Assembly (NCBI RefSeq): GCF_032444005.1
Contig: NC_091290.1
Location: forward strand, 135,656,001 to 135,720,000
Direction: 5' to 3'
Source of the DNA: Ranitomeya imitator
Lineage: Eukaryota
DNA: 64,000 nt
The notes under the pieces are model-generated. The model was not told where the DNA came from and searched no databases. It saw only the letters and a program-made list of their open reading frames with translations. Both the position numbers and the translations under genes were made by a program. How positions within the stretch are numbered: position 1 is the stretch's first letter; every line of letters starts with the position of its first letter. Positions 3,001 through 51,625 of this stretch are shown here, piece by piece.

Positions 3001-6000
3001 CATGGCAACCATTATGACATCTACATCGATACTGTGCCCGTCGCTGATTGGTCGAGGCGAATTCGCGGCAGACTGTGCCCGTCGCTGATTGGTCGAGGCA
3101 ACCTTTATGACATCGTCGCCATGCTGTGCCCGTCGCTGATTGGTCGAGGCAACCTTTATGATATCATCGTCGCCATGCTGTGCCCGTCGCTGATTGGTTG
3201 AGGCGAATTCGCGGCAGACTGTGCCCGTCGCTGATTGGTCGAGGCAACCTTTATGACATCATCGTCGCCATGCTGTGCCCGTCGCTGATTGGTCGAGGCG
3301 AATTTGCAGCAGACTGTGCCCGTCGCTGATTGGTCGAGGCAACCTTTATGACATCATTGTCGCCATGCTGTGACGCGGGATTTCCAGGACAGACAGACAG
3401 ACGGAAAAACCCTTAGGCAATTATATATATACTAGACTAGATTGTGGCCCGATTCTAACGCATCGGGTATTCTAGAATATGCATGTCCCCGTAGTATATG
3501 GACAATGATGATTCCAGAAATTGCGGCAGACTGTGCCCGTCGCTGATTGGTCGAGGCAACCTTTATGACATCGTCGCCATGGCAACCATTATGACATCTA
3601 CGTCGATACTGTGCCCGTCGCTGAATCAGAAACGTGGGATTTCTACGTCCTTTATGACATCATCGTCGCTGTGCCCGTCGCTGATTGGTCGAGGCCTGGC
3701 GGTTATTCCATCTGTCTGTCCTGAAAATCCCGCGTCTCTGGTTGGTCGAGGCCGCAAGGCCTCGACCAATCAGCGACGGGCACGGTATCAACGTAGAAAT
3801 CCCGCGTCTCTGATTGGTCGAGGCCACCAGGCCACGGGCACAGCGACGATGATGTCATAAAGGATGTAGGATGTAGAAATCCCACGTTGAGCGTCACTCT
3901 GTCCGAAGCCTTTATAGACTGCGCAAGCGCAAGCGCCGGCGCAGTCTGGCCCCCACAGAGTAACGCTCCCAGGAGATCGCGGTATGCGTAAACACTGAAC
4001 GCACACCGCGATCTCCAACAGAGAAGCAGGGACCGCCAGGAAGGTAAGTATCGGCTATATTCACCTGGCCTCGTTCCACCGCTGCGCGCCGCCATCTTCC
4101 GGGACCTCTGCCTGTGACGTTCAGTTCAGAGGGCGCGATGACGCGGTTAATGCGCAGCGGTGGAACGGGGCCAGGTGAATATAGCAAGTGCTGGGGGGCC
4201 TGAACTAGCGGCGATACCGGCACCTGACCCCCACAGCGCGCCGGTGTCCCCGCCTGCTCATGCCCCCCCAGCACTCGGCGCCCAGCGACGATAGGTGAGT
4301 ATGGTATTTTTTTTTTTCATATATTGCAGCAGCATACAGGGCATATACCATGGAGCATCTTATGGGGCCATAAACCATAATGGAGCAGTGTACGGGAGCA
4401 TAGACAATGGAGCATCTTATGGGCCATAAACCATAATGGAGCAGTGTACGGGGGCATATACAATGGAGCATCTTATGGGCCATAAACCATAATGGAGCAG
4501 TGTACGGGGGCATATACCATGGAGCGTCTTATGGGCCATAAACCATAATGGAGCAGTGTACGGGAGCATACACACTGGAGCATCTTATGGGGCCATAAAC
4601 CATAATGGAGCAGTGTACGGGGGCATATACAATGGAGCATCTTATGGGGCCATAAACCATAATGGAGCAGTGTACGGGGGCATATACAATGGAGCATCTT
4701 ATGGGGCCATCAACCATAATGGAGCAGTGTACGGGGGCATACACACTGGAGCATCTTATGGGGGCCATAAACCATAATGGAGCAGTGTACGGGGGAATAC
4801 ACACTGGAGCATCTTATGGGGCCATAAACCATAATGGAGCAGTGTACGGGGGCATATACAATGGAGCATCTTATGGGCCATAAATCATAATGGAGCAGTG
4901 TACGGGGGCATATACCATGGAGCATCTTATGGGGGCCATAAACTATAATGGAGCAGTGTACGGGGGCATATACAATGGAGCATCTTATGGGGCCCAAAAA
5001 CCATAATGGAGCAGTGTACGGGGGCATACAAACTGGAGCGTCTTATGGGGGCCATCAACCATAATGGAGCAGTGTATGGGGGCATACACTATGGAGCATC
5101 TTATGGGGCCATAAACCATAATGGAGCAGTGTATGGGGGCATACACTATGGAGCATCTTATGGGGCCATAAACCATAATGGAGCAGTGTACGGGGGCATA
5201 CACATTGGTGCATCTTATGGGGCCATAAACCATAATGGAGCAGTGTACGGGGGCATATACCATGGAGCATCTTATGGGGGCCATAAACCATAATGGAGCA
5301 GTGTATGGGGGCATATACAATGGAGCATCTTATGGGGCCATAAACCATAATGGAGCAGTGTACGGGGGCATATACAATGGAGCATCTTATGGGGGCCATA
5401 AACCATAATGGAGCAGTGTACGGGGGCATATACAATGGAGCATCTTATGGGGCCATAAACCATAATGGAGCAGTGTACGGGGGCATATAATATGGAGCAT
5501 CTTATGGGGCCATAAACCATAATGGAGCAGTGTACGGGGGCATATACTATGGAGCATCTTATGGGGGCCATAAACCTTTATGGAGCAGCGTATGGGGCAT
5601 ATGGATGGGAGCAGCAAATTAAAGAATGGTGGCGCAGGATGGGAGCAGCACATGACAGAATGGAGGCGCAGGATGGGAGCAGCACATGTCAGAATGGAGG
5701 CGCAGGATGGGAGCAGCACATGTCGGAATGGAGGCGCAGGATGGGAGCAGCACATGACAGGATGGAGGCGCAGGAAGGGAGCAGCACATGACAGGATGGG
5801 GGCACAGGATGGGTGCAGCACATGACAGGATGGGGGCGCAGGATGGGTGCAGCACATGACAGGATGGGGGGCAGGATGGGAGCAGCACATGACAGGATGG
5901 GGACGCAGGATGGAGCAGCACATACCAGGATGGAGACCATATACCAATATAAATGCTCGCCACCCGGGCGTAGAATGGGTTCAATAGCTAGTATATATAT

Positions 6001-9000: not shown

Positions 9001-11637
9001 CCGGCATCTCCACGGTGTTGTCCTGGGTTCTCACTAAGCAGAGCAGGCGCCGAGGAGGTCGGCAGTCTGTTGGCCATGGACTACTAACATGGCAACAGGG
9101 TCTTGGGCATCCATTCTCATTCCGGCGACGGAAAATCCAACACATTGGTGACTCTGTGTTGCAGTAGGTCGTTCGCCATGGAACCAGAGCCTGTCGAGAA
9201 CTTTTTGCGGTTCAGTGTGTTTATTAATTATTCATATTGTTCCTGCTCTTTGTAGGAAGTTTATATCCGTCAAGCGAATTGCAAATTATGCGACTGTATC
9301 ACCAAACAGAAGGAAACTCAACCGTTAAGTTTGTGAGCGAGATGCTGTCCATTGTGATCTTCTTGTACATCATTGTAGTCCAGGTGAGGATAATTTAGTG
9401 AACTTTCTATAGTCAAAGATAGGTAAGTAAACCTACGCCCCAGAGGTGTACACAGAAATCATCAGAGACCAAACCCCAGCCACCTTCATAGGAACAGAAT
9501 AATCAAACTCTAGCTGCCTGCAGCCACCACTAGGGGGAGCTAAGAGCACTGGAATTCATACAAAAGCCATTGAAGTGAAAAGTCTCCCCCTAGTGGTGGC
9601 TGCATGAAAACACCTCAGTGCTGCGCGCTCTTCTGCATCCTATATACAAATGGGCTCATCGATTCCTTTTGATCTTTAAAGTTGGTCCGTTTGAAGCAGC
9701 AAAAATGCTCCTATTTTTGCCAGTTAAGGAACTTGCTGGATTTGTGCATCATTGCAATCTGCTCCGCCAACACAGCGCTGTACATCAAGCGTATATATCT
9801 GCGCCAGCGGGATGTAGACCGTTACCATGCAGATCGTACTCGGTGAGAATACACTTTTAGATTTTGTTTTTATGCTATTGTCACTATAATTTATGTACAA
9901 CATTACGGAATAGGTTAGCGCTTTATTAAAGGGGTATTCCAGATGGAAGCACGATCCAATGGAGAGGTGATAAATGCTACTCTTGTTGGATCATCCGAAC
10001 TGGGGAATATTATCCGTTGCGGACGTTTATGGACTAAACCACTTCCAGAGAAGTCTCACACATCCATGGTCCAATTAAAGGTCTCTTGCCCCAAGTCATA
10101 GGCTCCGGCCATGTGAAAGTAGCCTGAGCCTGGATCCTCCAGACTGTCCCTTTAAATCATTTGACATGATCACTGTTCTTTAGCAGCTATCCTGGCTCAG
10201 TGGCGTCTCACCCCTTTCCTTGTAGATTTGTCAGCTTCTACGACACGGCCACCATAGACAGCGCCCAAAGCTACACCATCGCCTTTCTGGTGTCACTATT
10301 AACCATCAAGCTCTGGCGCCTCCTCAACCTGAACCCGAATCTGCACCTGATCACGACGACGCTGCAGAAGGCGTGGAACGAAATCAGCGGCTTCCTTCTC
10401 ACCATCCTCATCCTCCTGGTGGCGTACTCTATTTCGGTGAGTATTGTGCACCTCGGTGGAGCTTTATGTTCTCATTTTATATATAAATATATTTATTTTA
10501 TTATTTTTCAGTGCAACTTGCTTTTCGGCTGGACCATTTCCAATTACAGAACGGTGACGGACTCAGCTGTGACCATTATCAGCCTTTTAATTGGCATTTT
10601 TAATTACGATGAGGTAAGACTCACATCCGTACCACAATAGTTTACTCTTCCAAATCATTAAGGACTGTTCCAGATTCTTGAATAACCCCATACTGCATTC
10701 TGTTTTCGATCAGCGTCATAATTTCTCGCCAATACCCCATCACACCCTTATGACATCTTTCCTTGTGCAGGTAATTAATCTAGACCCCGTCCTGGGCTCC
10801 CTGCTCATCTTTACCTGCGTCATTTTTCTTGCATTCATAATCGTCAACATCTTCTTGTCCGCTTTGTTGAACGTCTTCTCCAGTGAGCGCAAGAACCCAA
10901 CGGTAAGAACAAAACAGTGAAAAAACAAAAAAGAACCGCCACTTGCAGCAAATAGGTCATCAGCCATAACAATACCAAGGTGCATACATGATTAAATATT
11001 TCTTCAACCTGATGAAGGCTGGTGTACTTACTTAGAAAATGCACATAAGGACACTTGTGACATCCAGTAATGGACATGCTCACGCAAGCAATATTAGGCA
11101 AGGCAAACTATGAAGAATGATGATATAGAGGAGATGAGCAATTTAGTTCTAGCTCCCTTTGTCCTGCGTCCAGACCAGTCCACCATGGCAGCGGGTCTTC
11201 GCTTCTGCACCCAGTGTCCAGGGCACCCATGGAACTAAATACACACCATGATAAATAGGAACAAGAAGCGAGGATGCCAGAAACATTAGTGAGGTATCGC
11301 CAGCACCAGTCAAATTGCGTATCTCTATTAAACAGTCATCGAGACAGTGACTTTCAAAGTAATCACACCAGCCTCATCTGGTCTAAAATCTATTATAGAA
11401 CTTACTCCAGTTGGTATAATGAAACCAGATGACGGATCAGCTTTATTATTGAACAAACACACAATTAACCTGTATACTCGCCTGTGACGTATCCACAACC
11501 TCATCTCCCCCTTTTCCACTTTATAGCCTTATGAAGAAAAAGAAATTGTGGACATGCTCATGTTAAAGCTGTCGGGACTTATCGGTGTATCCAAGAAGGC
11601 AGAACAGTCGTCAGCGGGGAAAGAGAAGCAGTCGTGA
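34..11637 (+). CDS. PKD1L3: Polycystin-1-like 3, 3' portion (~637 aa: TM segments, extracellular polycystin/TOP domain, channel domain, C-terminus); 5' exons lie upstream of the window
   Basis: Exons with AG/GT boundaries and consistent phases: 34-256, 425-524, 694-837, 6145-6327, 6454-6739, 6821-6954, 9256-9383, 9682-9842, 10226-10436, 10512-10613, 10771-10902, 11527-11637 (TGA). Peptides KDKATSWLISILLSLLQSI, GFITDGNCFLLGSPRIRQLR, YPGGGYVAELG, FVEFNVYNANINLFC, LQKAWNEISGF, NLLFGWTISNY are polycystin-1-like. Paralogue assignment rests on tail-to-tail adjacency to IST1. Confidence 0.92.
1640..2844 (+). mobile_element. Two fused + strand copies of a putative non-autonomous Helitron (family 1) with internal 54-bp tandem repeats
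   Basis: Begins A|TCTATATATATAA, then (GTCT)n. The first copy runs into the subterminal hairpin CCCGATGCGTTAGAAT (2027-2042) and jumps into a second copy. The 54-bp unit contains GACCAATCAGC. The intact 3' terminus is seen on the inverted copies. Confidence 0.65.
2887..3886 (-). mobile_element. Two head-to-tail minus-strand copies of Helitron family 1
   Basis: Minus-strand 3' ends with hairpin CCCGAT...ATCGGG followed by CCACAATCTAG|T (CTAG at 2887-2890 and 3437-3440). A 5' (TA)n/(GTCT)n end lies near 3430. No TIR or TSD. Confidence 0.7.
3887..5991 (+). mobile_element. Putative non-autonomous Helitron (family 2) containing two minisatellites
   Basis: Ends ...ACCCGGGCGTAGAATGGGTTCAATAGCTAG|T (CTAG 5988-5991); the hairpin core resembles family 1 (GCGT-AGAAT-GGG). 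Internal ~57-bp repeat at 4335-5575 (~22 copies) and ~34-bp repeat at 5600-5935. 5' end not located. Confidence 0.55.
7043..8770 (-). mobile_element. Decayed Tc1-like transposon, interrupted by a SINE
   Basis: TA|CAGT start at 7041-7046. Transposase remnants on minus: ORF 7766-7963 (KSTIKRRLHE...TTRCKPLIS, HTH region) and a GSVMAWACMAANG motif at ~7570-7610. Right end degenerate and approximate. Confidence 0.75.
8247..8527 (+). mobile_element. tRNA-derived SINE of V-SINE type
   Basis: Pol III A box TGGCGCAGTGG 8259, B box GGTTCGAACCC 8295; central GCGTGGGTTTCCTCCAGGCACTCCGGTTTCCTCCCAC (V-domain-like); L2-type 3' tail ending in (ATT)n; possible AAAAT TSD (8242/8528). Confidence 0.85.
9520..9603. 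repeat. Perfect 20-bp inverted repeat with 44-bp spacer (small MITE-like hairpin)
   Basis: GCAGCCACCACTAGGGGGAG at 9520-9539 and CTCCCCCTAGTGGTGGCTGC at 9584-9603. Confidence 0.8.
9930..10151. mobile_element. T2/Kolobok-type MITE (degenerate)
   Basis: TTAA|AGGGG... and ...CCCT|TTAA ends; TIRs are degenerate. Confidence 0.5.
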
Positions 11638-12120: not shown

Positions 12121-15100
12121 TTAAGTTTTCTTCTTCAGCTCCTCGAATCTGCGCGACAGGTCATCAAAATCAATATCTTCGGAATTGGAAGTTGCAGCTC
12201 CGGCAGAAGCAGCGGGGAGTGTGTCTGGAACGGAGGGCAATTCTGGGAGGACAAAGTTATCCGATACTTTTGTTCGGGGTTTGGCGACAGGTGCGGAGTT
12301 ACCTGGACCTGAAGAAATAAAGGATTGTGGTTCACCACTGTTCCTCATCTGTACCCCAAATATATATAATAAAGCATTACTTCTGACCATTAATCACGCT
12401 CGTCCTTATGTACACTCACCATCTTGAGAAGGTGCGTTTGCCTGTGGCCCGCCATCACCAATCTGTTGGAGACAAGGAGTTATAGAGTTGGTGTAAATAG
12501 ATTGGAAGGACCCGGTCTAGCGGGTGTCCATCAGAAGGAAGCTTGGCCTGGTGAGAGGTCGCACAGACAACGTCGCACCAGATCAGCTAATCAGGAGAAG
12601 GGGCGCCGATGTCGGGGAAGTAGGAGGAGGAACGCAGGAGTCTGATTTCGCCACTGAACCATTTTTATGTCATTTAACATCTCTCACCTTCAAAGAATTA
12701 CTGCAATTTACACAAAAACTTCTGACATGTCACCAAGACGTGGTGAATGTTAAGATTACTGCGGGTCCAGGTGAAGTATACTCCACCAATTAGAAAAAAT
12801 AAAAAAAAACACACAACTCTTCCAACGCTGAGCTCATTAGGATTACTGCTTCACCATACAGTGCTTCCGTCCCAAAATGTAGTAAGGAGTAAGTCTGACG
12901 TGCAGCGATTCTTCAAGCCGTGTACACATTGCTGTCTTATGAGCTCAGACTGAAAACATCAGACGCAAGCGCCACCGCCGTCCCTACGGTGTAGCATTAT
13001 GTGCACCTTCAGCTACTTACAGACTCATACGTTGGAGGCATACATGGGATTGGTGGGGGCCCCATGCCCATTGCTGGAGGATTTAGATTACCAAAAGGTT
13101 GATAGATTCCCATAGGCGGTCCATTGAATGTCTCGTGCTGTGAATAGAAAAAAGAAAAGTGTCATTACAATGCAAACTGCATAAATTACTTAATAGATCT
13201 CAGTGTTGATGAGGCTGGTGTACTTACTTTGAAACTAGTTGTATAAAAGTAATTAAATGAGGTTTTAATTTATAATTTATACAGTCATTCTGATATTGAT
13301 TTTCACAGTAAGCGCACCCATCTCATCAGGTATAGCTCACATACCGGTCCACCAGGTGCGGGGTAACTGAATGGAATAGTAGGAGTCGGCATCTGCATAG
13401 CTGGCACAGTCGGCAATGGTATACCAAATCCTCCACCACCTCCGCCACCACCGCCGCCTCCTCCTTTCTTCATGTCGTCTGAAAATTCCACATCTATAAG
13501 ATCTGCCTCGATGCCAGTGGGAACCTCGGCCTTAAAATGCAGGGGGTAAGTGGAAATTGGAAGAGGTGTAGGGTCACTAGCGGACAAGGCTACTGTTAGT
13601 GAAATGATTGCTCTTCACCTACCATGACCACAGAATCCGGTTCATATGGTACATTGTAGTTCTTGGCTATCTCGATGAGGTACCTCTCGACCAGAATTTT
13701 TGGAGGAGCCTCCACACTCAGCTTGTGCATCAGCTACAAGAAGGAAGAAGAAGTCACGACTAGATAATATCTTCTCAAATGCAAGGTCACCCAGTGACAC
13801 CAGCACTTACCCGATCATTGACCGTTCCGATCTGGTTTGTCCTGCACAGCTTGCCATATTCTTTACTATACTTGGCGCACAGTTGATCTGCGACCTGCGG
13901 GAAGAAATAGCGGAGCGCGTTAGTCCAGCACAGCATCATAGTGCGTAAACTAATTTTGCACACGTGTATGACACCAATAACTCACTATTTTCAGTTCAGA
14001 CACTTCAGTCTGTAGACGTGGAGCCGCCCAAATTAACGTGGAGACGGCTTCACCCAAACCCGGATCCAGCTCCCTGGAAGAATACAAATATGTACACTGA
14101 TAACTAGAGGATGGAAAACCTTAACGAGCTCCATATATACAGTGCTACCACCATGGAGCGGGTTTTTTTTTTTTTTTTTAAACCTAAGACTGGAGTGGAT
14201 GCAGGCAGAAGAAGACATAAGAGTATGTTCACACGTGACAGATACGCAGAGAAAAAAGCCACAGTGCAGAATCTCATCCACGTGAATATTGACCGGTGGT
14301 GCGGATTTTACATCTGCAACGTGTCCAATTTGTGCGCATCGGCAGCAAGAATGCATGTGTGGCACTTCTGCATCAAAATCTTTGACAAAAATAAAATCAC
14401 ATGCAATAGGCAGATTTTTATCAGGGATTTTGATGAGGATCTGCAATGGTTCAAAATGTGTACGTGTGAATGTGACCCAAGAGGAAAGACGTCTAAAAAT
14501 GTCACTTTACTCTAGAGTTTGGCTCAAATGACTGCAGGTGTGAATGCAACCTAATAGGGTAAGTGATTAAATCATTGCAATACTAAGGAAACCCTGCAAA
14601 CATGACGTGTTGGGGACCAGGACTGGAGTTTAGGAAGAAGTGCCTGACAACTAGGACCACTGCGATCCTGATAACTTGAGTGCTCCTCCACTCTCTGTAA
14701 AGAACGTACGGATGGTAATAGGAATTTACAGACATGCAAGTCCTCCTGGGGTTCTAGGAATAGGACACTCACCAAACTACTTTTAAGGGGGCTTTCTTAT
14801 GATATTGCTGACGTATACTTAGCAAAGATCATCAATATGAGATGGGTGAGGGTCCGATGCCCACCGCCCACCACAATCAGCTGCAAACAGTGAATAGAGC
14901 TGAATCCACCGTTGAAGCTGGTAACAGCGGATCTGTGGGGGGGGGCCCAGAGTCGGATCTCCACAGATCGGATTTTGGTGCACGATAGGATTATCAGTTG
15001 GAAAAATCCCTTTAATCTCTTACTTCATGGATTGAATTAACCCGAATCTGGCCAGGAGCAGATCACAGTACAGCTCTAGAATCTCCATGGCTTCCACCAG

Positions 15101-15476
15101 GTAATCTTCTCGGATAATGTGCTCCACCCGGATCCTCGCTCGCTCATCCTTCCCGGATGATAAATAGTCCGCAATCTCCTTCCGGGCCTTTTGCGCCAAC
15201 TCGGCTGCAAGGAGAAAACGAAGAAGATAAACTTAGATTCCGTCTTGTATCTAGTTCTGTGCATCCCACCTTGGCAGTGCAAAACCACCACCCCCTTGGC
15301 AGAGCAAAACCACCAAACCCATTGGCAGTGCAAAGTCACCACCCCCATTGGCAGTGCAAAACCTCTTTAATTGCTGCGAGTTACTCACTTTTCTTTTTCT
15401 CCAGGAGTTTTAGTCGGTTTATGACAAGCCTCAAATTCACTCGAAGCCGCTCAGCCTTGAACCCGGAGCCCAACAT
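12121..15476 (-). CDS. IST1: IST1 factor associated with ESCRT-III, complete CDS, 361 aa
   Basis: Exons (+ coordinates, read on minus): 15389-15476 (MLGSGFKAERLRVNLRLVINRLKLLEKKK), 15024-15204, 13986-14073, 13811-13894, 13623-13733, 13345-13530, 13021-13137, 12420-12462, 12121-12308 (...DNFVLPELPSVPD...DIDFDDLSRRFEELKKKT*, MIM elements). Sum is 1086 nt = 362 codons, all GT-AG. Confidence 0.97.
14221..14478. mobile_element. Degenerate Harbinger-type MITE
   Basis: TAA|GAGTATGTTCACACGT...ACGTGTGAATGTGACCC; termini resemble the better-preserved copies at 24835 and 34475. Confidence 0.45.
14787..15011. mobile_element. T2/Kolobok-type MITE (degenerate)
   Basis: TTAA|GGGG... and ...CCCT|TTAA, ending ~10 bp from an IST1 splice donor. 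Confidence 0.45.
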
Positions 15477-15776
15477 TGTGCTTCACTCCTGCAATTAAAG
15501 AGATATTCATTCACATACTGAAAAAAGGGGGAAACTATTGGTAAAAGGCACAGACTATGGTTCCGTAATATAGTGTTCAGTGATTTCCCTTTTTCTTTGG
15601 CAAAATCACAAGAAATCTAGTGTAGAAGTCACAGGCAAAACAGGATGCAAGTGCACTAGGGGCGTGACCGACTTATCCCCGCCCTCAATGCACTTCCATA
15701 TAACTTGCACATTCTGGACAAGGGGCATCTCGCTACATGTGCCGCTCCCAGCAGTGGAGGGTACAACAGCTTTCTA

Positions 15777-17338
15777 CAGTGGTATGAAAAAGTTTGGACA
15801 CCCCTGGTCAAAATTACCGTTAATGTTAACAGTTAAGCAAGATAAAATGATCTCTTAAAAAGTCTAAAGTTAAAGATGACAAATATCCTTTATATTTTAA
15901 GCAAAAAAATAAAATATTAATCTTTTACATTTTAAAAGTTTCAAAAAGGAAAATGGGTCAATGCAAAAATTTGGGCACCCTGCATGGTTAGTACCTAGTA
16001 ATACCCTCTTTTAAAAATATCACAGATTGTAAACCCTTTTTTGTAGCCAGACAAGAGTCTTTCAATTCTTGTTTGAGGGATTTTCATCCATTCTTTCTGG
16101 ATAATTCCTACAGTTCTGTGAGATTCCTGGTCGTTTTCCATCCTCTGCTATTTTCAGGTCTAGCCACAGATTTTCAATGATGTTCAGATCAGGGGACTGT
16201 GAGTGCCATTGTAAAACCTTCACCTTGCGCCTTTTGAGGTCGTCTATTGCGCATTGTGACATTTGTTTGTGATCATTATCCATCTGTAGAAGCCATCCTC
16301 TTCTCACAGCTTTCTTACAGATGGTGTTATGTTTGCATCAAGAATTTGTTGAAATTTCATTGAATCCATTCTTCCCTCTACCCGTGAAATGTTCCCCGTG
16401 CCATTGGCTGCAACACAACCCCAAAGCATGATTGATCCACCCCCATGCTTAAATGGTTGGTAATGTGTTATTTTCATGAAATTCTGGGCCCTTTTTCTCA
16501 ACACATACCTTTGATCATTGTGGCCACAGGACTTGTTCCCAAAATGCACAAGGCTTGTTTAGATGTTATTTTGAATACTTCTGACACTGAATTTTATGGT
16601 AAGGATGCTGGAGAGGTTTTCTTCTGATGACTCTTCCATAAAGGCCATATATGTGCAGGTGTCTCTGAACAGTAGAATAATGTACCAACTCCAGAGTCTG
16701 CTAAATCTTTCTTAAGGTCTTTTGCAGTCAATCGGAGGTTCTGATTTGCCTCTCTAGCAATCCTACAGGCAGCCATCACTGAAATTTTGCTTGGTTTTCC
16801 AGACATTATCTTGACCTCCACTGTTCCTGGTAACGGCCATTTCTTAATTACATTTTGAACTAAGGAAAGGACAACTTGAAAACACTTTGCTATCATCTTA
16901 TAGCCTTTTCCTGCTTTGTGAGCGTCCACCATTTCCATTTTCAGAGTGCTAGGCTGCTGCTTAGTAGAACCCATGGCTGCTGTTTTTTGGGCACAAGGTT
17001 AGATGAGGTTGTGTTTTCACAAAGCTGGAAAATTTGCATCATGCGGCCTTTCCTAATGATGATAGTGAACAAGCCATAACCTAACAGCCTAATTAAGGTC
17101 TGAAACCTTGGTCAAAGTTATCTGAGCACACAATTCTCTAAGGGTGCCCAAACTTTAGCATCAGCCCATTTTCCATTTTGTTCATGTTAATTTTCATATA
17201 GATTTTTTTTTGTTTTGCCTAAAATACAAAGGAAATGTGTAATCTTTAACTTCAGACCTTTAAGAGATAGTTTCATCTTCAACTGTTCACAATAACAGTA
17301 ATTCTGACCAGGGGCGCCCAAACTTTTACATGCCACTG
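15777..17338 (-). mobile_element. Near full-length Tc1 (IR/DR type) transposon with frameshifted transposase, in IST1 intron 1
   Basis: TA|CAGTGG...CCACTG|TA; long imperfect TIRs with internal direct repeats (AAAAATTTGGGCACCC ~15965, GGGTGCCCAAACTTT ~17141). Broken ORFs 16594-16974 (paired/HTH), 16304-16549 (HGGGSIMLWGC), 16062-16307 (MDND..., SPDLNIIENLW). Confidence 0.93.
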
Positions 17339-18426
17339 TAGCTGAATAGCCATCACCCCTTCCTCAGGTGACAGGTACAAGTCCCATGGAGGATGAATCA
17401 TCGTGTCTGGGGAGTACAACTACAACACATCGTTTATAACTTCCTGCTCCGCCCGCTCTCTACTATTACACGTGCCTGATGTCACTGCCACACGCTGGGA
17501 AAACACACGAAAACTAAAGCAGCGTTCTTACCCCCCTGTCTGACATCTACAGGTCTATGGATTACAACTTTTCTACTTTTATTACCAAAAATTTAAGGCA
17601 GCTTTTTCTACAAAAAGCCTTAAATAGAATTCTACCTTTTTTTTTGTCTACAGTTCCTATGCAGACCTATGCGTCTCCATGGTTACGGAACAGACAACAC
17701 TGTTGGTAATCTGCACCTTGTATACAGCACATTCCTCATGGCAGATACGGACATGTGACCCGACCTGAGGGTGGTGAAGTAATGCAGCCCATGACCTCAG
17801 ATGGAGGGCAGCACCGTAGCACAGGGTACAGCTGTTGCAAAACTACTACCCCCAGGAGGCAATGACAGTGCCACCCGAGCATAATGCAAAACTACAACTC
17901 CCAGCATGCAATGACATTAATTTATGGGTGATACTTAGGTAATTTAGAAGGGGTTTGTCCAGTAGTGGACACCCCTTTATAAATATCTATACTTTTTATA
18001 TTCTAGGGACGAATGTTAATGTCCCTGGGTGACTCCTGCTGCTCCCTTAGAGGGGTCGTCCTGGACCTACCCGCACTCCTTTGTTTCCCTATCAAGCCAA
18101 GCAGGTGGCTGGGAAGTAATAATGTAACACAAGCCATCAATCACAAAACACAGAAAATAAGAAAAACTACCCCAAAAAGAAAAGAAAGTAAAGAACTTCT
18201 TAATTTTGTTATCGCCGTAATTGTCCTGCTCTGTAGAATTGTTACACTGAACGTTGTAAAAGGAAAACTTTAAAAAAATAAATAAAGGGTGGGGTTGGTT
18301 TTTATTATTTAGATTTCAGAAGATTTAACAGTACAACGAACCAACAGCTATGAAAGGGGGCGGGAGACATGGCAGCAGGAAGGGGTTAATGGGGTCCTGT
18401 GGACAGCCTATGGGCAGAGGATGGCC

Positions 18427-21400
18427 GGGGTCAGGGGCCGGGCTCCCGGGACGGGGTCAGGCTCCCGGGACATGGTCTCGGGACGGGGTCAGGGGCCGGG
18501 CTCCCGGGACGGGGTCAGGGGCCGGGCTCCCGGGACGGGGTCAGGGGCCGGGCTCCCGGGACGGGGTCAGGGGCCGGGCTCCCGGGACGGGGTCAGGGGC
18601 CGGGCTCCCGGGACGGGGTCAGGGGCCGGGCTCCCGGGACGGGGTCAGGGGCCGGGCTCCCGGGACGGGGTCAGGGGCCGGGCTCCCGGGACGGGGTCAG
18701 GGGCCGGGCTCCCGGGACGGGGTCAGGGGCCGGGCTCCCGGGACGGGGTCAGGGGCCGGGCTCCCGGGACGGGGTCAGGGGCCGGGCTCCCGGGACGGGG
18801 TCAGGGGCCGGGCTCCCGGGACGGGGTCAGGGGCCGGGCTCCCGGGACGGGGTCAGGGGCCGGGCTCCCGGGACGGGGTCAGGGGCCGGGCTCCCGGGAC
18901 GGGGTCAGGGGCCGGGCTCCCGGGACGGGGTCAGGGGCCGGGCTCCCGGGACGGGGTCAGGGGCCGGGCTCCCGGGACGGGGTCAGGGGCCGGGCTCCCG
19001 GGACGGGGTCAGGGGCCGGGCTCCCGGGACGGGGTCAGGGGCCGGGCTCCCGGGACGGGGTCAGGGGCCGGGCTCCCGGGACGGGGTCAGGGGCCGGGCT
19101 CCCGGGACGGGGTCAGGGGCCGGGCTCCCGGGACGGGGTCAGGGGCCGGGCTCCCGGGACGGGGTCAGGGGCCGGGCTCCCGGGACGGGGTCAGGGGCCG
19201 GGCTCCCGGGACGGGGTCAGGGGCCGGGCTCCCGGGACGGGGTCAGGGGCCGGGCTCCCGGGACGGGGTCAGGGGCCGGGCTCCCGGGACGGGGTCAGGG
19301 GCCGGGCTCCCGGGACGGGGTCAGGGGCCGGGCTCCCGGGACGGGGTCAGGGGCCGGGCTCCCGGGACGGGGTCAGGGGCCGGGCTCCCGGGACGGGGTC
19401 AGGGGCCGGGCTCCCGGGACGGGGTCAGGGGCCGGGCTCCCGGGACGGGGTCAGGGGCCGGGCTCCCGGGACGGGGTCAGGGGCCGGGCTCCCGGGACGG
19501 GGTCAGGGGCCGGGCTCCCGGGACGGGGTCAGGGGCCGGGCTCCCGGGACGGGGTCAGGGGCCGGGCTCCCGGGACGGGGTCAGGGGCCGGGCTCCCGGG
19601 ACGGGGTCAGGGGCCGGGCTCCCGGGACGGGGTCAGGGGCCGGGCTCCCGGGACGGGGTCAGGGGCCGGGCTCCCGGGACGGGGTCAGGGGCCGGGCTCC
19701 CGGGACGGGGTCAGGGGCCGGGCTCCCGGGACGGGGTCAGGGGCCGGGCTCCCGGGACGGGGTCAGGGGCCGGGCTCCCGGGACGGGGTCAGGGGCCGGG
19801 CTCCCGGGACGGGGTCAGGGGCCGGGCTCCCGGGACGGGGTCAGGGGCCGGGCTCCCGGGACGGGGTCAGGGGCCGGGCTCCCGGGACGGGGTCAGGGGC
19901 CGGGCTCCCGGGACGGGGTCAGGGGCCGGGCTCCCGGGACGGGGTCAGGGGCCGGGCTCCCGGGACGGGGTCAGGGGCCGGGCTCCCGGGACGGGGTCAG
20001 GGGCCGGGCTCCCGGGACGGGGTCAGGGGCCGGGCTCCCGGGACGGGGTCAGGGGCCGGGCTCCCGGGACGGGGTCAGGGGCCGGGCTCCCGGGACGGGG
20101 TCAGGGGCCGGGCTCCCGGGACGGGGTCAGGGGCCGGGCTCCCGGGACGGGGTCAGGGGCCGGGCTCCCGGGACGGGGTCAGGGGCCGGGCTCCCGGGAC
20201 GGGGTCAGGGGCCGGGCTCCCGGGACGGGGTCAGGGGCCGGGCTCCCGGGACGGGGTCAGGGGCCGGGCTCCCGGGACGGGGTCAGGGGCCGGGCTCCCG
20301 GGACGGGGTCAGGGGCCGGGCTCCCGGGACGGGGTCAGGGGCCGGGCTCCCGGGACGGGGTCAGGGGCCGGGCTCCCGGGACGGGGTCAGGGGCCGGGCT
20401 CCCGGGACGGGGTCAGGGGCCGGGCTCCCGGGACGGGGTCAGGGGCCGGGCTCCCGGGACGGGGTCAGGGGCCGGGCTCCCGGGACGGGGTCAGGGGCCG
20501 GGCTCCCGGGACGGGGTCAGGGGCCGGGCTCCCGGGACGGGGTCAGGGGCCGGGCTCCCGGGACGGGGTCAGGGGCCGGGCTCCCGGGACGGGGTCAGGG
20601 GCCGGGCTCCCGGGACGGGGTCAGGGGCCGGGCTCCCGGGACGGGGTCAGGGGCCGGGCTCCCGGGACGGGGTCAGGGGCCGGGCTCCCGGGACGGGGTC
20701 AGGGGCCGGGCTCCCGGGACGGGGTCAGGGGCCGGGCTCCCGGGACGGGGTCAGGGGCCGGGCTCCCGGGACGGGGTCAGGGGCCGGGCTCCCGGGACGG
20801 GGTCAGGGGCCGGGCTCCCGGGACGGGGTCAGGGGCCGGGCTCCCGGGACGGGGTCAGGGGCCGGGCTCCCGGGACGGGGTCAGGGGCCGGGCTCCCGGG
20901 ACGGGGTCAGGGGCCGGGCTCCCGGGACGGGGTCAGGGGCCGGGCTCCCGGGACGGGGTCAGGGGCCGGGCTCCCGGGACGGGGTCAGGGGCCGGGCTCC
21001 CGGGACGGGGTCAGGGGCCGGGCTCCCGGGACGGGGTCAGGGGCCGGGCTCCCGGGACGGGGTCAGGGGCCGGGCTCCCGGGACGGGGTCAGGGGCCGGG
21101 CTCCCGGGACGGGGTCAGGGGCCGGGCTCCCGGGACGGGGTCAGGGGCCGGGCTCCCGGGACGGGGTCAGGGGCCGGGCTCCCGGGACGGGGTCAGGGGC
21201 CGGGCTCCCGGGACGGGGTCAGGGGCCGGGCTCCCGGGACGGGGTCAGGGGCCGGGCTCCCGGGACGGGGTCAGGGGCCGGGCTCCCGGGACGGGGTCAG
21301 GGGCCGGGCTCCCGGGACGGGGTCAGGGGCCGGGCTCCCGGGACGGGGTCAGGGGCCGGGCTCCCGGGACGGGGTCAGGGGCCGGGCTCCCGGGACGGGG

Positions 21401-23300
21401 TCAGGGGCCGGGCTCCCGGGACGGGGTCAGGGGCCGGGCTCCCGGGACGGGGTCAGGGGCCGGGCTCCCGGGACGGGGCCAGGGGCCGGGCTCCCGGGAC
21501 GGGGCCAGGGGCCGGGCTCCCGGGACGGGGCCAGGGGCCGGGCTCCCGGGACGGGGCCAGGGGCCGGGCTCCCGGGACGGGGCCAGGGGCCGGGCTCCCG
21601 GGACGGGGCCAGGGGCCGGGCTCCCGGGACGGGGCCAGGGGCCGGGCTCCCGGGACGGGGCCAGGGGCCGGGCTCCCGGGACGGGGCCAGGGGCCGGGCT
21701 CCCGGGACGGGGCCAGGGGCCGGGCTCCCGGGACGGGGCCAGGGGCCGGGCTCCCGGGACGGGGCCAGGGGCCGGGCTCCCGGGACGGGGCCAGGGGCCG
21801 GGCTCCCGGGACGGGGCCAGGGGCCGGGCTCCCGGGACGGGGCCAGGGGCCGGGCTCCCGGGACGGGGCCAGGGGCCGGGCTCCCGGGACGGGGCCAGGG
21901 GCCGGGCTCCCGGGACGGGGCCAGGGGCCGGGCTCCCGGGACGGGGCCAGGGGCCGGGCTCCCGGGACGGGGCCAGGGGCCGGGCTCCCGGGACGGGGCC
22001 AGGGGCCGGGCTCCCGGGACGGGGCCAGGGGCCGGGCTCCCGGGACGGGGCCAGGGGCCGGGCTCCCGGGACGGGGCCAGGGGCCGGGCTCCCGGGACGG
22101 GGCCAGGGGCCGGGCTCCCGGGACGGGGCCAGGGGCCGGGCTCCCGGGACGGGGCCAGGGGCCGGGCTCCCGGGACGGGGCCAGGGGCCGGGCTCCCGGG
22201 ACGGGGCCAGGGGCCGGGCTCCCGGGACGGGGCCAGGGGCCGGGCTCCCGGGACGGGGCCAGGGGCCGGGCTCCCGGGACGGGGCCAGGGGCCGGGCTCC
22301 CGGGACGGGGCCAGGGGCCGGGCTCCCGGGACGGGGCCAGGGGCCGGGCTCCCGGGACGGGGCCAGGGGCCGGGCTCCCGGGACGGGGCCAGGGAACGGG
22401 CTCCCGGGACGGGGCCAGGGGACGGGGGTCAGGCTCTCGGGACGGGGGTCAGGCTCTCGGGACGGGGGTCAGGCTCTCGGGACGGGGGTCAGGCTCTCGG
22501 GACGGGGGTCAGGCTCTCGGGACGGGGGTCAGGCTCTCGGGACGGGGGTCAGGCTCTCGGGACGGGGGTCAGGCTCTCGGGACGGGGGTCAGGCTCTCGG
22601 GACGGGGGTCAGGCTCTCGGGACGGGGGTCAGGCTCTCGGGACGGGGGTCAGGCTCTCGGGACGGGGGTCAGGCTCTCGGGACGGGGGTCAGGCTCTCGG
22701 GACGGGGGTCAGGCTCTCGGGACGGGGGTCAGGCTCTCGGGACGGGGGTCAGGCTCTCGGGACGGGGGTCAGGCTCTCGGGACGGGGGTCAGGCTCTCGG
22801 GACGGGGGTCAGGCTCTCGGGAGGGGGGTCAGGCTCTCGGGACGGGGGTCAGGCTCTCGGGACGGGGGTCAGGCTCTCGGGACGGGGGTCAGGCTCTCGG
22901 GACGGGGGTCAGGCTCTCGGGACGGGGGTCAGGCTCTCGGGACGGGGGTCAGGCTCTCGGGACGGGGGTCAGGCTCTCGGGACGGGGGTCAGGCTCTCGG
23001 GACGGGGGTCAGGCTCTCGGGACGGGGGTCAGGCTCTCGGGACGGGGGTCAGGCTCTCGGGACGGGGGTCAGGCTCTCGGGACGGGGGTCAGGCTCTCGG
23101 GACGGGGGTCAGGCTCTCGGGACGGGGGTCAGGCTCTCGGGACGGGGGTCAGGCTCTCGGGACGGGGGTCAGGCTCTCGGGACGGGGGTCAGGCTCTCGG
23201 GACGGGGGTCAGGCTCTCGGGACGGGGGTCAGGCTCTCGGGACGGGGGTCAGGCTCTCGGGACGGGGGTCAGGCTCTCGGGACGGGGGTCAGGCTCTCGG
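18427..23300 (+). repeat. GC-rich three-domain tandem array: 115 x 26 bp (GGGGTCAGGGGCCGGGCTCCCGGGAC), 35 x 26-bp variant (GGGGCCAGGGG...), 44 x 20 bp (GACGGGGGTCAGGCTCTCGG)
   Basis: Read directly. Domain A 18485-21474, domain B 21475-22384 plus one variant unit, domain C 22421-23300. Units are almost invariant within each domain. Confidence 0.97.
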
Positions 23301-23359
23301 ATTTGCAGCCTCTCACTCGCTGACAGCAGGCACAGCTATAGGAAGCGATGAGGGATGGA

Positions 23360-23800
23360 GACAAAGGCAGTTCCAGAAGTGACGACCCGCCCTCCGTACA
23401 CGGGCTATGGGGCCGCATTGTGTGTGAGGGGAGACACAGGACGCGCAGCCGCACACACCGGCCACCGTACTCACCGCAGACCCCACACAATCCCCGCCGG
23501 GTATAGAGGCCTCACTGCGCCGCCGGCTCTGCTGTCAATCCCCAGCACTGCGCCAGAACACGCCCTCCGCAGACGTCACGACGAAAGGCGGGGCTAAGGA
23601 GTAGAAATAAATGCGCTTCCTAATGACGTCAATGTCAGGTGCCACTGTGGTGGGCGGGGTTTAGCCTGGGATAAGCAGAGAGGTGATAGGTGAGAAGTGT
23701 TTACTTCCTGGTGACGTCACTACCATGTGATATAGTCTTGAGAGGCTGCGGGCAGAGGAGTGTGCAGAGTGTAACTCTTTGCTGACCGGTCTGTTTGGTT
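23360..23800. promoter_or_regulatory. CpG-rich, probably bidirectional promoter (IST1 leftward, ZNF821 rightward)
   Basis: CRE motifs GACGTCA 23572, TGACGTCA 23624 and 23712; GC boxes 23587 and 23652; ETS core ACTTCCTG 23703 directly next to a CRE; lies between two divergently oriented genes. Confidence 0.6.
23475..23570 (-). other. IST1: Probable non-coding first exon of IST1
   Basis: Minus-strand donor G|GTGAGT (ACTCAC at 23469-23474) inside a CpG-rich promoter-like tract. The ATG exon has its own acceptor (exon edge 15488), so an upstream UTR exon is required. The 5' end is approximate. Confidence 0.6.
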
Positions 23801-24339
23801 TCGGCAGCTTCTGCACCTTACCTCCTCTGGGCTCAGGCTAAACAGTCACCACTGCAGCCATTACTGTAATTTAAAGGGATTGTCCATTCATGGTTCAGGT
23901 TAAGAGTGACCACTGCTACCATTACTGTAATTTAAAGGGATTGTCCATTTATATGTAAATAAAGCCTAATTATTGTCCACTTTCATTTTCCCTCTCTCTT
24001 TTCAGGAGTCATACCTTTTTTTTTAATACTTGTTTTTCTTGTAGTTTTGAAGGACGCCATTCATTTTACCATAGAAAATTAGTGAAAAAAAAAATTCCCT
24101 TGCAGGGTGAAATGTTCATTTTTGATTTTAACGGCGTCTATTAAAACTGCCCCGTTAAATATGATTTTGCTGGTCATTGCGATTACGGCGATGCCAAACT
24201 TGGCTATATCATATTTTAGCATTAAAAAAAATCTATTTTTTTTTTTAATAAAATATATTTTGGATTTGTGTCACCATTTTTCAAGACCCCTTATCTTTTT
24301 TTTTTTTAACATTTCTGTTGGTAAGGGGTTGTTTCTTAT

Positions 24340-24434
24340 AATTAATTGAATAACTTAAGTTTAATATTAATATATTAATTAATATAAATATACTCAATAC
24401 AAATTTAGTGTAATTGATTTAATAAATAAATTTA

Positions 24435-25154: not shown

Positions 25155-26119
25155 TAAAAGAGGTGACCCGACTGCCCGTCAGGGGTCCTCAGCTATCCGG
25201 ACTTTATAACACAAGACGTCAATGGGAGGCCCCCCAAAAAAGTCACAAAGATGGCGGAGTGTTTTTTTTTTTTTTTTTCAAGCCTTTTTGAGGTGTTTTC
25301 ACCTCACATTTTATTCACTGTTTATAGGGTTTAGAAAAATGGCTAAAAAGACATTTTTTTTCACAGAAAACTTTAGTGAAAAAAAAAGGCAGATAGACGG
25401 AGCATTTTCTGAAGCGATTTTCTGCTTGACGCGTCGTGTGAATGTCGCCAGGTAGGATGAAGAGCGCCGGACACACTGGGAAGGGGGCATACATATGGGG
25501 GGCACACAGCAATGGCTGACAGGACTCGAGACACCTCGTTATGTAGCAGACTTGTTATGGGGGGGCATGTATCATGTCTGCGCCACCATGACAGCGCTGT
25601 CCCCATACACAGAGGGAAGGGCCGTCATGGGGGGCTCTATTACACTATTACTGGCATTTGTGGGGGCTTTTACTGTAAATACCGAGGTGAGGGGCCCAAT
25701 GACATGAGACTGATTGTATACAATGGCTGAAGCGCCATCATCCCCCTCTGCCTGGTCACATGACCGTATGACGTCATCAGAGGGCCTCGCTCCCTCCAGC
25801 AGATGCGGCCGCACTCACCGTGTGTCTGGAGGAGCCGGGACACGCCCGGGCACCGGGGCTCATGCATGTGAGTACAGGCGGTGGCCGTGCACCGGAGCTC
25901 ACTGCCGGGTAAACACCCCCCGGGATGTACCGCTGTAATCACTGCAGCGGGGCCGGGGAGACATGCAGATGGCGGGGCGCCCCCTGCTGACCGTGCAGCC
26001 CTGCACCAGGCATGCTCCATACATACCAGACCTGCATGGAATGTGATAATGCCATGCCCAGCTGCACTCCTCATCCATTCAGTGCAAGCGCTGCTCCGGG
26101 GTAATGGGTGGTCCTGCGA

Positions 26120-26850
26120 TGGGGAGAGCCCTGCTCCAGGGTAATGGGGGGCTCCCTGCTCCAGGGTAATGGGGGGCTCCCTGCTCCGGGGCGTTGGGGG
26201 GGGGGGTTCCCTGCTCCGGGGCGTTGGGGGGGGGGGGTTCCCTGCTCCGGGGCGTTGGGGGGGGGGGTTCCCTGCTCCGGGGCGTTGGGGGGGCGCCCTG
26301 CTCCGGGGCGTTGGGGGGGGGGTTCCCTGCTCCGGGGCGTTGGGGGGGGGGGTTCCCTGCTCCGGGACGATATTGGGGGGGCCCTGCACCGGGGCGATGG
26401 GGGGCCTGCTCTGTTGGGCACCCTGCTCCGGGACGATATTGGGGGGGCCCTGCATCGGGGCGATGGGGGGCCTGCTCTGTTGGGCGCCCTGCTCCGGGAC
26501 GATATTGGGGGGGGGGCCCTGCATCGGGGCGATGGGGGGCCTGCTCTGTTGGGCGCCCTGCTACGGGACGATATTGGGGGGGGCCCTGCATCGGGGCGAT
26601 GGGGGGCCTGCTCTGTTGGGCGCCCTGCTCCGGGACGATATTGGGGGGGGGGCCCTGCATCGGGGCGATGGGGGGCCTGCTCTGTTGGGCGCCCTGCTAC
26701 GGGACGATATTGGGGGGGGCCCTGCATCGGGGCGATGGGGGGCCTGCTCTGTTGGGCGCCCTGCTACGGGACGATATTGGGGGGGCCCTGCTCCAGGGCG
26801 ATGGGGGGCCTGCTCTGTTGTGACCCCAGCTCCGGGGCGATGGGGCCCTT
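26120..26850 (+). repeat. GC-rich minisatellite (~28-bp CCCTGCTCCGGGGCGTTG(G)n units, then ~60-bp units), probably inside a larger non-autonomous element
   Basis: Read directly; accounts for the overlapping repetitive ORFs at 25670-27119. Confidence 0.85.
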
Positions 26851-51500: not shown

Positions 51501-51625
51501 ATCCTGAGTTACATCCTGTATTATACCCCAGAGCTGCACTCACTATTCTGCTGGTGCAGTCGCTGTGTACATACATTACATTACCGATCCGGAGTTACAT
51601 CCTGTATTACACTCAAGAGCTGCGC
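42560..51625. repeat. 86/81-bp satellite, ~100 copies
   Basis: Consensus GCAGTCACTGTGTACATACATTA(CATTA)CTGATCCTGAGTTACATCCTGTATTATACCCCAGAGCTGCACTCACTATTCTGCTGGT; the two unit lengths differ by one CATTA. Confidence 0.97.
47200..47606 (+). mobile_element. 5'-truncated L2 LINE inserted into the satellite
   Basis: Encodes ..PNPHSFKRALKTHLFRLAY (L2 ORF2 end); 3'UTR ends TGTAAAGCGCTGCGGAATATGTTGGCGCTATATAAATAAA(ATT)n; an extra CATTA at the junction is consistent with a 5-bp TSD. Confidence 0.85.

What the first reader, a model, noticed from the sequence alone, without database searches (positions are those of the whole stretch)
18427..23300. 4.9-kb, ~85% GC array of about 150 tandem canonical G-quadruplex units in IST1 intron 1, ~170 bp from the putative first exon
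Seen in sequence: each 26-bp unit has four G-tracts with short loops (GGGG-TCA-GGGG-CC-GGG-CTCCC-GGG), three CpGs, a SmaI site and a GGGGCC hexamer (two in domain B). G-tracts are all on the + strand, which is the IST1 template strand. Inference: an array like this next to a housekeeping promoter could act as a methylation-sensitive extension of the CpG island, a Pol II or replication obstacle, or a length-polymorphic regulator, by loose analogy with GC-rich first-intron/promoter expansions such as C9orf72 and CSTB. Length may be mis-assembled.
Basis: partly seen in the sequence, partly recalled or inferred. Interest (0 to 1): 0.7.

Follow-up and report, generated by a model that had tools for sequence, protein, structure and literature searches.

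The report
Young G-rich minisatellite in IST1 intron
A poison frog's housekeeping gene IST1 carries, just inside its first intron, a 4.9-kb very GC-rich tandem repeat whose units each spell a G-quadruplex motif; it is real and striking, but it looks like a young, lineage-specific, tolerated minisatellite and not a proven regulator.

Summary
Window 18426-23300 is one tandem array. It has 116 identical 26-mers, then 36 26-mers with one T>C change, then 44 20-mers, with only a few variant units. The 26-mers give 152 canonical G-quadruplex motifs, all on the + strand. The last 880 bases (the 20-mers) are not canonical.

RNA contigs from two studies join exon 1 (23475-23557) to exon 2 (15389-15488). 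IST1 intron 1 is therefore 15489-23474, the array starts 174 bases inside it and fills 61% of it. The G-rich strand is the IST1 template.

Four other hyloid frogs show no such array in the part of this intron that I could read; in one of them the whole intron was readable. Two close relatives hold related 20-mer units.

Best reading (0.7): a recently expanded minisatellite in a very repeat-prone genome (46% of this window is tandem repeat), removed by splicing. A regulatory role, methylation state and true length remain untested.

It is a new member of a known kind. The scan has noted other intronic minisatellites in this genome, but not this one on other DNA.

The parts
18426..18482 (+). Left edge of the array: one A-type 26-mer, then a 19-mer (ACGGGGTCAGGCTCCCGGG, which lacks the 7-nt GGGCCGG-type insert) and a degenerate 13-mer (ACATGGTCTCGGG)
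18483..21472 (+). Domain A: 115 identical 26-mers ACGGGGTCAGGGGCCGGGCTCCCGGG. Each has one canonical G4 motif, 3 CpG and one SmaI site. GC 0.846
21473..22421 (+). Domain B: 35 identical 26-mers with T>C (GGGGCCAGGGG), one variant unit (GGGAACGGG) at 22383-22408, and a 13-mer transition at 22409-22421. GC 0.885
22422..23301 (+). Domain C: 44 20-mers ACGGGGGTCAGGCTCTCGGG (a C>G variant at 22822-22841; the last unit has 1 mismatch). Two G-tracts per unit, no canonical G4 motif. GC 0.75
15489..23474 (-). IST1 intron 1 (7,986 nt; GT at 23474-23473, AG ending at 15489). The array is 61% of it
   Evidence: RNA contigs of runs X3 and X4 lie on 23474-23557 and 23474-23544 and continue into letters that match 15458-15487 exactly. 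Acceptor and donor read
23475..23557 (-). IST1 exon 1 (non-coding; minimum extent, the 5' end is not defined by contigs)
   Evidence: table 8: X3 record 9 and X4 record 17
15389..15488 (-). IST1 exon 2, the first coding exon (ATG at 15476; MLGSGFKAERLRVNLRLVINRLKLLEKKK)
   Evidence: Ist1 Pfam domain in the next exon (15023-15232)
23484..23812 (.). IST1 exon 1 and promoter block conserved with Rhinoderma (L001 4609-4969), Leptodactylus (L002 1733-1996) and Dendropsophus (L003 787-1053). It has CRE-like TGACGTCA sites
15774..17341 (-). Tc1/mariner remnant, also inside intron 1 (inverted ends of about 209 nt, 78% alike; broken transposase frames). Unrelated to the array

Best explanation
The array is a young, lineage-specific GC-rich minisatellite (a variable-number tandem repeat) that grew inside IST1 intron 1 by replication slippage and/or unequal exchange, in a genome and a locus that are unusually prone to tandem arrays.

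Inferred history: a 19-20-bp unit carrying two G-tracts gained a 7-nt GGGCCGG-type insert. This gave a 26-bp unit with four G-tracts, that is, a complete G4 motif with short loops. This unit, and then a T>C derivative of it, expanded as pure blocks.

The array is transcribed as the C-rich strand within the IST1 pre-mRNA and is removed by normal splicing. As single-stranded DNA, the + strand (the IST1 template) is predicted to fold into one three-tetrad G4 per 26-mer. This propensity more probably explains why the array is unstable and homogeneous than it gives the array a role in IST1 control.

Shown: sequence anatomy, intron position, strand, splicing, absence in other frog families, and related units in close relatives. 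Inferred: mode of growth, order of the unit changes, G4 folding and neutrality.
For: - Array anatomy and near-perfect identity, with variants arranged in pure blocks (A x115, B x35, C x44) and no interspersion.
- The 19-mer at the left edge and the 20-mers at the right end differ from the 26-mer by a 6-7-nt insert.
- The window is 46.5% tandem repeat, with at least nine other arrays. Earlier notes of this scan report many intronic minisatellites in this genome.
- The exon 1-exon 2 junction is seen in contigs from two studies (runs guessed to be RNA), at contig depths 138.6 and 186. No such contig lies on intron positions 23241-23435.
- No GC-rich array and no G4 cluster in the orthologous intron of four other frogs: Rhinoderma darwinii (4.5 kb seen), Leptodactylus fuscus (1.7 kb), Dendropsophus ebraccatus (0.8 kb) and Engystomops pustulosus (whole interval between exon 2 and the ZNF821 block).
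- Close relatives hold related units. Organism B has a 50-letter contig identical to the 20-mer tandem. Organism C (about 94% alike) has a 797-letter contig that crosses the right boundary, plus further contigs on the 20-mers.
- The flanks share no terminal repeats, and the unit occurs nowhere else in the window.
- The best G4 register is GGG-AC-GGGG-TCA-GGGG-CC-GGG, with loops of 2, 3 and 2 nt. The G4 model beats hairpins for DNA: -50.6 against -29.2 kcal/mol per four units. Watson-Crick folding is no better than in shuffled sequence.
- In human minisatellites tested in yeast, only G4s with loops of 3 nt or less drive G4-dependent instability (PMC6614823).
- Frog tandem repeats are linked to recombination-rich regions, and amphibians lack PRDM9 (PMC10794172, PMC5519329).
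Against: - No population or long-read data: length polymorphism, which defines a VNTR in practice, is not shown.
- Neutrality is inferred from absence of conservation and from normal splicing. A lineage-specific function is not excluded.
- The position, contiguous with a CpG-island promoter and with CpG observed/expected 0.70, is compatible with a regulatory role.
- Only 0.6% of shuffled units with the same composition give one G4 motif per unit, so the G-tract layout is not a simple by-product of base composition.
- Contig depths cannot measure expression.
- The 26-mer domains were not tested in relatives.
Confidence: 0.7

Rival explanations
1. The array is a working cis-regulatory element of the IST1 (or IST1/ZNF821) promoter region. 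It could be an extended, methylation-sensitive CpG island, a template-strand G4 brake on Pol II, a replication-origin G-rich element, or a multi-copy protein-binding platform whose copy number tunes expression.
For: - It starts 174 nt from the exon 1 donor and is contiguous with a conserved promoter block.
- It meets CpG-island criteria over 4.9 kb: GC 0.835, CpG observed/expected 0.70, 547 CpG.
- It has 152 short-loop G4 motifs on one strand.
- The G-tract layout is rare among shuffled units, 0.6%.
- Template-strand G4s can block RNA polymerases in vitro (PMC7708042).
Against: - No such array in the readable part of the intron in four other hyloid frogs, whose IST1 promoter block is otherwise conserved.
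- Near-identity of units means that CpG retention says nothing about methylation.
- IST1 contigs are spliced across it at high contig depth.
- No binding, methylation, pausing or origin data exist.
- Similar arrays are common in this genome without any shown function.
Confidence: 0.12
2. The array is real, but its assembled length and perfect homogeneity are partly an assembly product: copy number collapsed or inflated, and variants smoothed. Under this reading the '4.9 kb, about 150 units' figure is unreliable.
For: - 115 and 35 byte-identical units in a row at 85-88% GC are hard for any sequencing chemistry.
- No raw long reads were available. All runs offered are kept as contigs only.
- The contigs of the relatives break at the array.
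Against: - The ordered domain structure, with distinct edge units and single variant units, is what a read-spanned array looks like, not a collapsed one.
- There are no N runs in the window.
- An independent run of a close relative holds the exact 20-mer tandem.
- Even a two-fold error in length would not change what the element is.
Confidence: 0.15
3. The array is the internal repeat of a transposable element, or one copy of a dispersed satellite family that landed in the intron.
For: - Frog minisatellites often derive from parts of transposable elements (PMC10794172).
- A Tc1/mariner remnant lies 1.1 kb away in the same intron.
Against: - No terminal inverted or direct repeats join the two flanks, and the flanks are not repeated elsewhere in the window apart from the separate Tc1 ends.
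- The unit has no other match in 64 kb, even with 3 mismatches.
- Contigs of the relatives on the 20-mers have depth near single-copy level, whereas a true high-copy element 750 nt away reaches about 3000.
Confidence: 0.03

Closest known systems
Human G4-forming minisatellites CEB1 and CEB25 (Piazza et al. 2015, as summarised in PMC6614823)
   Same: Tandem units of tens of bp, GC-rich with strong G/C strand asymmetry. Each unit carries a G4 motif. Short loops (3 nt or less) are the feature tied to instability, and the best register here has loops of 2, 3 and 2 nt.
   Different: Here there are 152 units with almost no variant repeats, arranged in pure blocks. The array sits inside a first intron next to a promoter, in a frog. 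Folding and instability have not been tested.
C9orf72 intron-1 GGGGCC repeat expansion
   Same: A GC-rich, G4-capable repeat in intron 1 close to the promoter and CpG island of a broadly expressed gene. GGGGCC hexamers are present (188).
   Different: The hexamers are not tandem (one or two per 26-mer). The G-rich strand is the template, so the IST1 pre-mRNA carries the C-rich strand. There is no sign of pathology or silencing. The C9orf72 facts are from general knowledge.
Insulin-linked polymorphic region (INS VNTR) and the CSTB dodecamer repeat
   Same: G-rich or GC-rich tandem repeats beside a promoter whose length is associated with expression in humans (general knowledge).
   Different: Those lie upstream of the start site and have 12-15-bp units. 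This one is intronic, has 26- and 20-bp units, and no length-expression data exist for it.
G-loop-forming regions such as immunoglobulin switch regions (PMC7708042)
   Same: A kilobase-scale G-rich tandem repeat in an intron just downstream of a promoter.
   Different: G-loops need the G-rich strand to be the non-template strand. Here it is the template strand for IST1, so co-transcriptional G-loops are disfavoured.
Other intronic minisatellites noted by this scan in the same genome (STX4 intron 1, TERF2 intron 1, TBC1D10B intron 4)
   Same: Short units amplified head to tail near the 5' end of introns in a repeat-prone poison-frog genome.
   Different: According to those unchecked notes, they grew from a recognisable functional motif and some are shared across frog families. 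This one has no identified seed motif, and no such array was seen in the readable part of the intron in four other hyloid frogs.

Membership tests
Minisatellite / VNTR | Head-to-tail array of units of about 10-100 bp | tested here: met
   26-bp x153.7 and 20-bp x44.1; register parse
Minisatellite / VNTR | Copy number varies among individuals or alleles | not testable with these tools
   Only contigs of public runs were available, with no raw long reads
Minisatellite / VNTR | Single locus, not a dispersed element | tested here: inconclusive
   No other copy in the 64-kb window, and contigs of the relatives are near single-copy depth. The whole genome could not be searched
Canonical putative G-quadruplex sequence (G3+ N1-7, four tracts) | Four G3+ tracts with loops of 1-7 nt | tested here: met
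   152 motifs on the + strand in domains A and B, none on the - strand. Not met in domain C, where loops are 10 nt
Canonical putative G-quadruplex sequence (G3+ N1-7, four tracts) | Folds into a G4 in K+ (CD, melting, DMS, polymerase stop) | not testable with these tools
   Only an energy model: -12.6 kcal/mol per unit in the register it chose, beating hairpins under DNA parameters. G4Hunter 1.2-1.4
CpG island | Length over 200 bp, GC over 0.5, CpG observed/expected over 0.6 | tested here: met
   4,875 bp, GC 0.835, observed/expected 0.70; the adjoining promoter has 0.74
CpG island | Unmethylated in germ line and soma | not testable with these tools
   No methylation data. The units are too alike for CpG decay to be informative
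C9orf72-type hexanucleotide expansion | Uninterrupted tandem GGGGCC units, G-rich on the sense strand | tested here: not met
   The hexamers are isolated within 26-mers. The G-rich strand is the IST1 template
G-loop / switch-region-like element | G-rich strand is the non-template strand of the transcript that crosses it | tested here: not met
   IST1 is on the - strand, shown by the splice junction in RNA contigs. All G-tracts are on the + strand

The most novel reading that the evidence does not exclude
Gain of a 7-nt insert turned a two-tract 19-20-mer into a 26-mer holding a complete short-loop G4. That change set off a G4-driven runaway expansion to about 150 copies right behind the IST1 promoter. 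The resulting template-strand G4 / C-rich-RNA array now acts as a copy-number-dependent modulator (Pol II brake, replication origin or CpG-island extension) specific to this poison-frog lineage.
Probability: 0.1. Interest if true: 0.6.

Novelty: new member of a known kind. Interest (0 to 1): 0.3.

Why it matters
If the array length is right, this is a natural construct that would be hard to build. It has 152 identical short-loop G4 motifs on the template strand, starting about 260 nt or more from the start of an expressed housekeeping gene, and splicing across it is intact.

It could serve to test three things in vivo: whether template-strand G4 arrays slow Pol II, how a cell replicates and methylates 4.9 kb of 85% GC repeat, and whether a change of unit that completes a G4 motif speeds up minisatellite growth.

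As it stands it adds one more, unusually pure, example to the known class of G-rich minisatellites. It also adds to the picture of a very array-prone frog genome.

Tried and rejected
- Rfam scan of the whole window: no family.
- Flank-to-flank comparison for terminal repeats or target-site duplication: nothing.
- Search for the unit elsewhere in the window with 3 mismatches: only the array.
- Watson-Crick structure as the special feature: rejected. z-scores were -0.4 to +1.3 for DNA and -1.2 to +0.7 for the pre-mRNA strand; only domain B RNA reached -2.3.
- The three + strand 'ORFs' of about 1,650 aa across the array are a by-product of a unit without stop codons and are not genes.
- Orthologous DNA from the closest annotated relatives could not be read. 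Phyllobates terribilis, Anomaloglossus baeobatrachus and Bufo gargarizans were listed without DNA. Eleutherodactylus coqui was not on record.
I laid only the right flank plus three units, so the left flank and the 26-mer domains are untested in other runs.
- The shared 8-mers between this array and the 26.1-26.8 kb arrays are at chance level for this composition (my estimate, no call), and I dropped that idea.
- Transcription-factor motifs in the unit (nuclear-receptor half-site GGGTCA, AP-2-like GCCNNNGGC in domain B, Sp/KLF-like GGGACGGGG) are short enough to arise by chance in 85% GC sequence. I did not pursue them.
Exons were searched by reference only.
- The large representative-protein search was not used.
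Full report
**1. Is the array there?**

Yes. Tandem Repeats Finder reports a 26-bp unit x153.7 at 18426-22426 (99% matches, no indels). It also reports a 20-bp unit x44.1 at 22419-23300. Reading the sequence and parsing it in register gives this layout:
- A left edge at 18426-18482: one 26-mer, a 19-mer that lacks a 7-nt insert, and a degenerate 13-mer.
- Domain A: 115 identical 26-mers (18483-21472).
- Domain B: 35 identical 26-mers that differ by one T>C (21473-22382), then one variant unit and a 13-mer.
- Domain C: 44 20-mers (22422-23301), two of them with a single change.

GC is 0.846, 0.885 and 0.75 in the three domains and 0.835 overall. GC skew is about +0.27. The window has no N.

- 153 SmaI sites.
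- 188 GGGGCC hexamers, one per A unit and two per B unit.
- Three CpG per 26-mer.
- 547 CpG in all, observed/expected 0.70.

**2. G-quadruplex motifs**

With the usual pattern (four G3+ tracts, loops 1-7), domains A and B hold 152 motifs on the + strand and none on the - strand. The remaining 59 kb of the window holds 7 on the + strand and 2 on the - strand.

Domain C is different. Each 20-mer has only two G3+ tracts separated by 10 nt, so it has no canonical motif. About one fifth of the stated interval is therefore not 'canonical G4'.

GGG-AC-GGGG-TCA-GGGG-CC-GGG has loops of 2, 3 and 2 nt and leaves CTCCC as a linker between successive motifs.

Only 0.6% of shuffled units of the same composition give one motif per unit. 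G4Hunter means are 1.31, 1.19 and 1.40 for domains A, B and C.

In ViennaRNA with its G4 term and DNA parameters, four units fold as four G4s at -50.6 kcal/mol. The best hairpin fold reaches -29.2. With RNA parameters, hairpins win. Ordinary base-paired folding of either strand is no better than in dinucleotide shuffles, apart from domain B RNA at z -2.3.

All of this is prediction. No folding has been shown.

**3. Gene context**

Stop-to-stop frames on the - strand show the IST1 exons from 12124 to 15232. The exon at 15023-15232 matches Pfam Ist1 at E 2.8e-23. The first coding exon is 15389-15488. It has an acceptor TTGCAG|GAGTGAAGCACAATG and encodes MLGSGFKAERLRV....

Logan contigs of two runs from two studies (the tool guesses both to be RNA) lie on 23474-23557 and 23474-23544. 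They then continue into 30 letters that match 15458-15487 exactly. Three things follow:
- Exon 1 is at least 23475-23557.
- Intron 1 is 15489-23474 (7,986 nt, GT-AG).
- The array begins 174 nt inside the intron and makes up 61% of it.

No contig from these runs lies on 23241-23435.

IST1 is on the - strand, so the G-rich + strand is its template and the pre-mRNA carries the C-rich strand.

The neighbours are:
- PKD1L3 (+ strand, PKD_channel hit at 10200-10640).
- ZNF821 (+ strand; coding exons 27.7-30.47 kb; STPR domain; 95-96% identical to ZNF821 of the dendrobatoid frogs Anomaloglossus and Phyllobates).
- ATXN1L (- strand, 36430-38484).

These best hits fit the earlier notes of this scan, which call the genome a Ranitomeya poison frog. 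I did not verify the species.

**4. Relatives**

Through ZNF821 orthologues I fetched the head-to-head IST1/ZNF821 region of four other hyloid frogs.
- *Rhinoderma darwinii* (L001): the IST1 exon 1 and promoter block aligns at 4609-4969. The 4.5 kb of intron 1 to its left holds only an (ACAT)18 microsatellite and a few weak repeats.
- *Leptodactylus fuscus* (L002): the block is at 1733-1996. The visible 1.7 kb of intron has no array and no G4 motif.
- *Dendropsophus ebraccatus* (L003): only 0.8 kb of intron is visible, without an array. An AT-rich 32-bp x60 array lies on the other side of the promoter.
- *Engystomops pustulosus* (L004): exon 2 (1741-1836) and the ZNF821 block (9237-9568) bracket the whole intron. 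That interval has GC 0.42, no G4 motif on either strand, and only a 2.2-copy repeat.

The array is therefore not an old feature of the locus.

Closer in, laying contigs on 23241-24400 gave two results.
- A run labelled as another organism (B) holds a 50-letter contig identical to the 20-mer tandem. That length is what a 31-mer graph gives for a pure period-20 repeat.
- A third organism (C, about 94% alike over 668 nt) has a 797-letter contig that covers 23285-23952 and continues 98 letters further to the left. Other contigs of this organism lie on the 20-mers with a one-base gap.

Related units thus exist in close relatives. Their number and the presence of the 26-mer are unknown.

**5. What it most likely is**

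Several findings point the same way:
- The window is 46.5% tandem repeat, with at least nine other arrays.
- Earlier notes list many intronic minisatellites in this genome.
- In frogs, tandem arrays are abundant and tied to recombination-rich regions (PMC10794172).
- PRDM9 was not found in amphibians (PMC5519329). In other taxa that lack it, recombination is directed to promoter-like features.

Against this background the array is best read as a young minisatellite next to a promoter.

Its internal logic fits stepwise growth. This order is inferred:
- Both ends carry 19-20-mers.
- The 26-mer equals the 19-mer plus a 7-nt GGGCCG-type insert, which adds two G-tracts and completes a short-loop G4.
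- That unit is the one that reached 151 copies.
- A T>C derivative then spread as a single block.

In human minisatellites tested in yeast, only G4s with loops of 3 nt or less caused G4-dependent instability (PMC6614823). The G4 propensity is therefore a plausible driver of growth and homogenisation.

The flanks share no terminal repeats, and the unit is not found elsewhere in the window. I see no sign of a transposon origin. A separate Tc1/mariner remnant lies at 15774-17341.

**6. Function**

Nothing here shows one.
- The orientation is the opposite of the known first-intron bias, in which G4 motifs favour the non-template strand (PMC6614823).
- It is also the opposite of what G-loops need (PMC7708042).
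- A G4 on the template strand could block a polymerase (PMC7708042), yet IST1 contigs spliced across the intron are among the deepest laid.
- The CpG-island criteria are met. However, units this alike carry no record of CpG decay, so methylation state cannot be inferred.

I put a regulatory role at about 0.12. I put a material error in assembled length at about 0.15; that would not change what the element is.

**7. Limits**

- The left flank and the 26-mer domains are untested in other data.
- All runs were contigs, so no copy number, expression level or transcript ends can be claimed.

**8. Verdict**

The element is a new, unusually pure member of the known class of G-rich, G4-capable minisatellites. 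The scan had not noted this array on other DNA, though it has noted other intronic minisatellites in this genome.

Noticed in passing
window 26129-26841 (with 25751-25895): A second G-rich (+ strand) minisatellite block with 25-, 30- and 66-bp units. It lies just right of a block conserved with Rhinoderma, Leptodactylus, Dendropsophus and Engystomops that is probably ZNF821 exon 1 and promoter. For ZNF821 the G-rich strand would be the non-template strand, the usual first-intron orientation.
   Followed up: partly
window 15774-17341: A Tc1/mariner remnant inside IST1 intron 1. Its inverted ends (about 209 nt) are 78% alike, and it has broken transposase frames with HTH_SB and DDE_3 hits.
   Followed up: partly
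window 42563-51627 and 52948-64000: Two large satellites: 86-bp x106 with 172/253-bp higher-order periods, and 39-bp x285 that runs off the window end. Together with the other arrays, they make 46.5% of the window tandem repeat.
   Followed up: no
window 23572-23720; L001 4706-4872; L002 1819: The IST1 promoter keeps CRE-like TGACGTCA sites across frog families: two full sites plus one GACGTCA here, three in Rhinoderma, one in Leptodactylus.
   Followed up: partly
window 24039-24073: A 35-nt piece of a very high-copy dispersed element. Summed contig depth is about 3000, against 3.7 for single-copy sequence, in a relative's DNA run. It is also present in many RNA contigs.
   Followed up: no
L001 4495-4568: Rhinoderma darwinii has an (ACAT)18 microsatellite about 20 nt inside IST1 intron 1, so the same spot carries a different simple repeat in another frog family.
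   Followed up: no
L003 1368-3307: Dendropsophus ebraccatus has an AT-rich 32-bp x60 array between the IST1 promoter block and ZNF821, unrelated in sequence to the array studied here.
   Followed up: no
window 41196-41749: A GC-rich 30-bp x18.5 array (98% alike) about 2.7 kb upstream of the ATXN1L open reading frame (36430-38484, - strand).
   Followed up: no
L001 5860-5943: The Rhinoderma annotation extends IST1 to an alternative 5' exon with its own ATG (ATGGGAGCCCCAGGGGAG|GTGAGT). This exon lies about 1.3 kb upstream of the exon 1 that aligns with this window.
   Followed up: no
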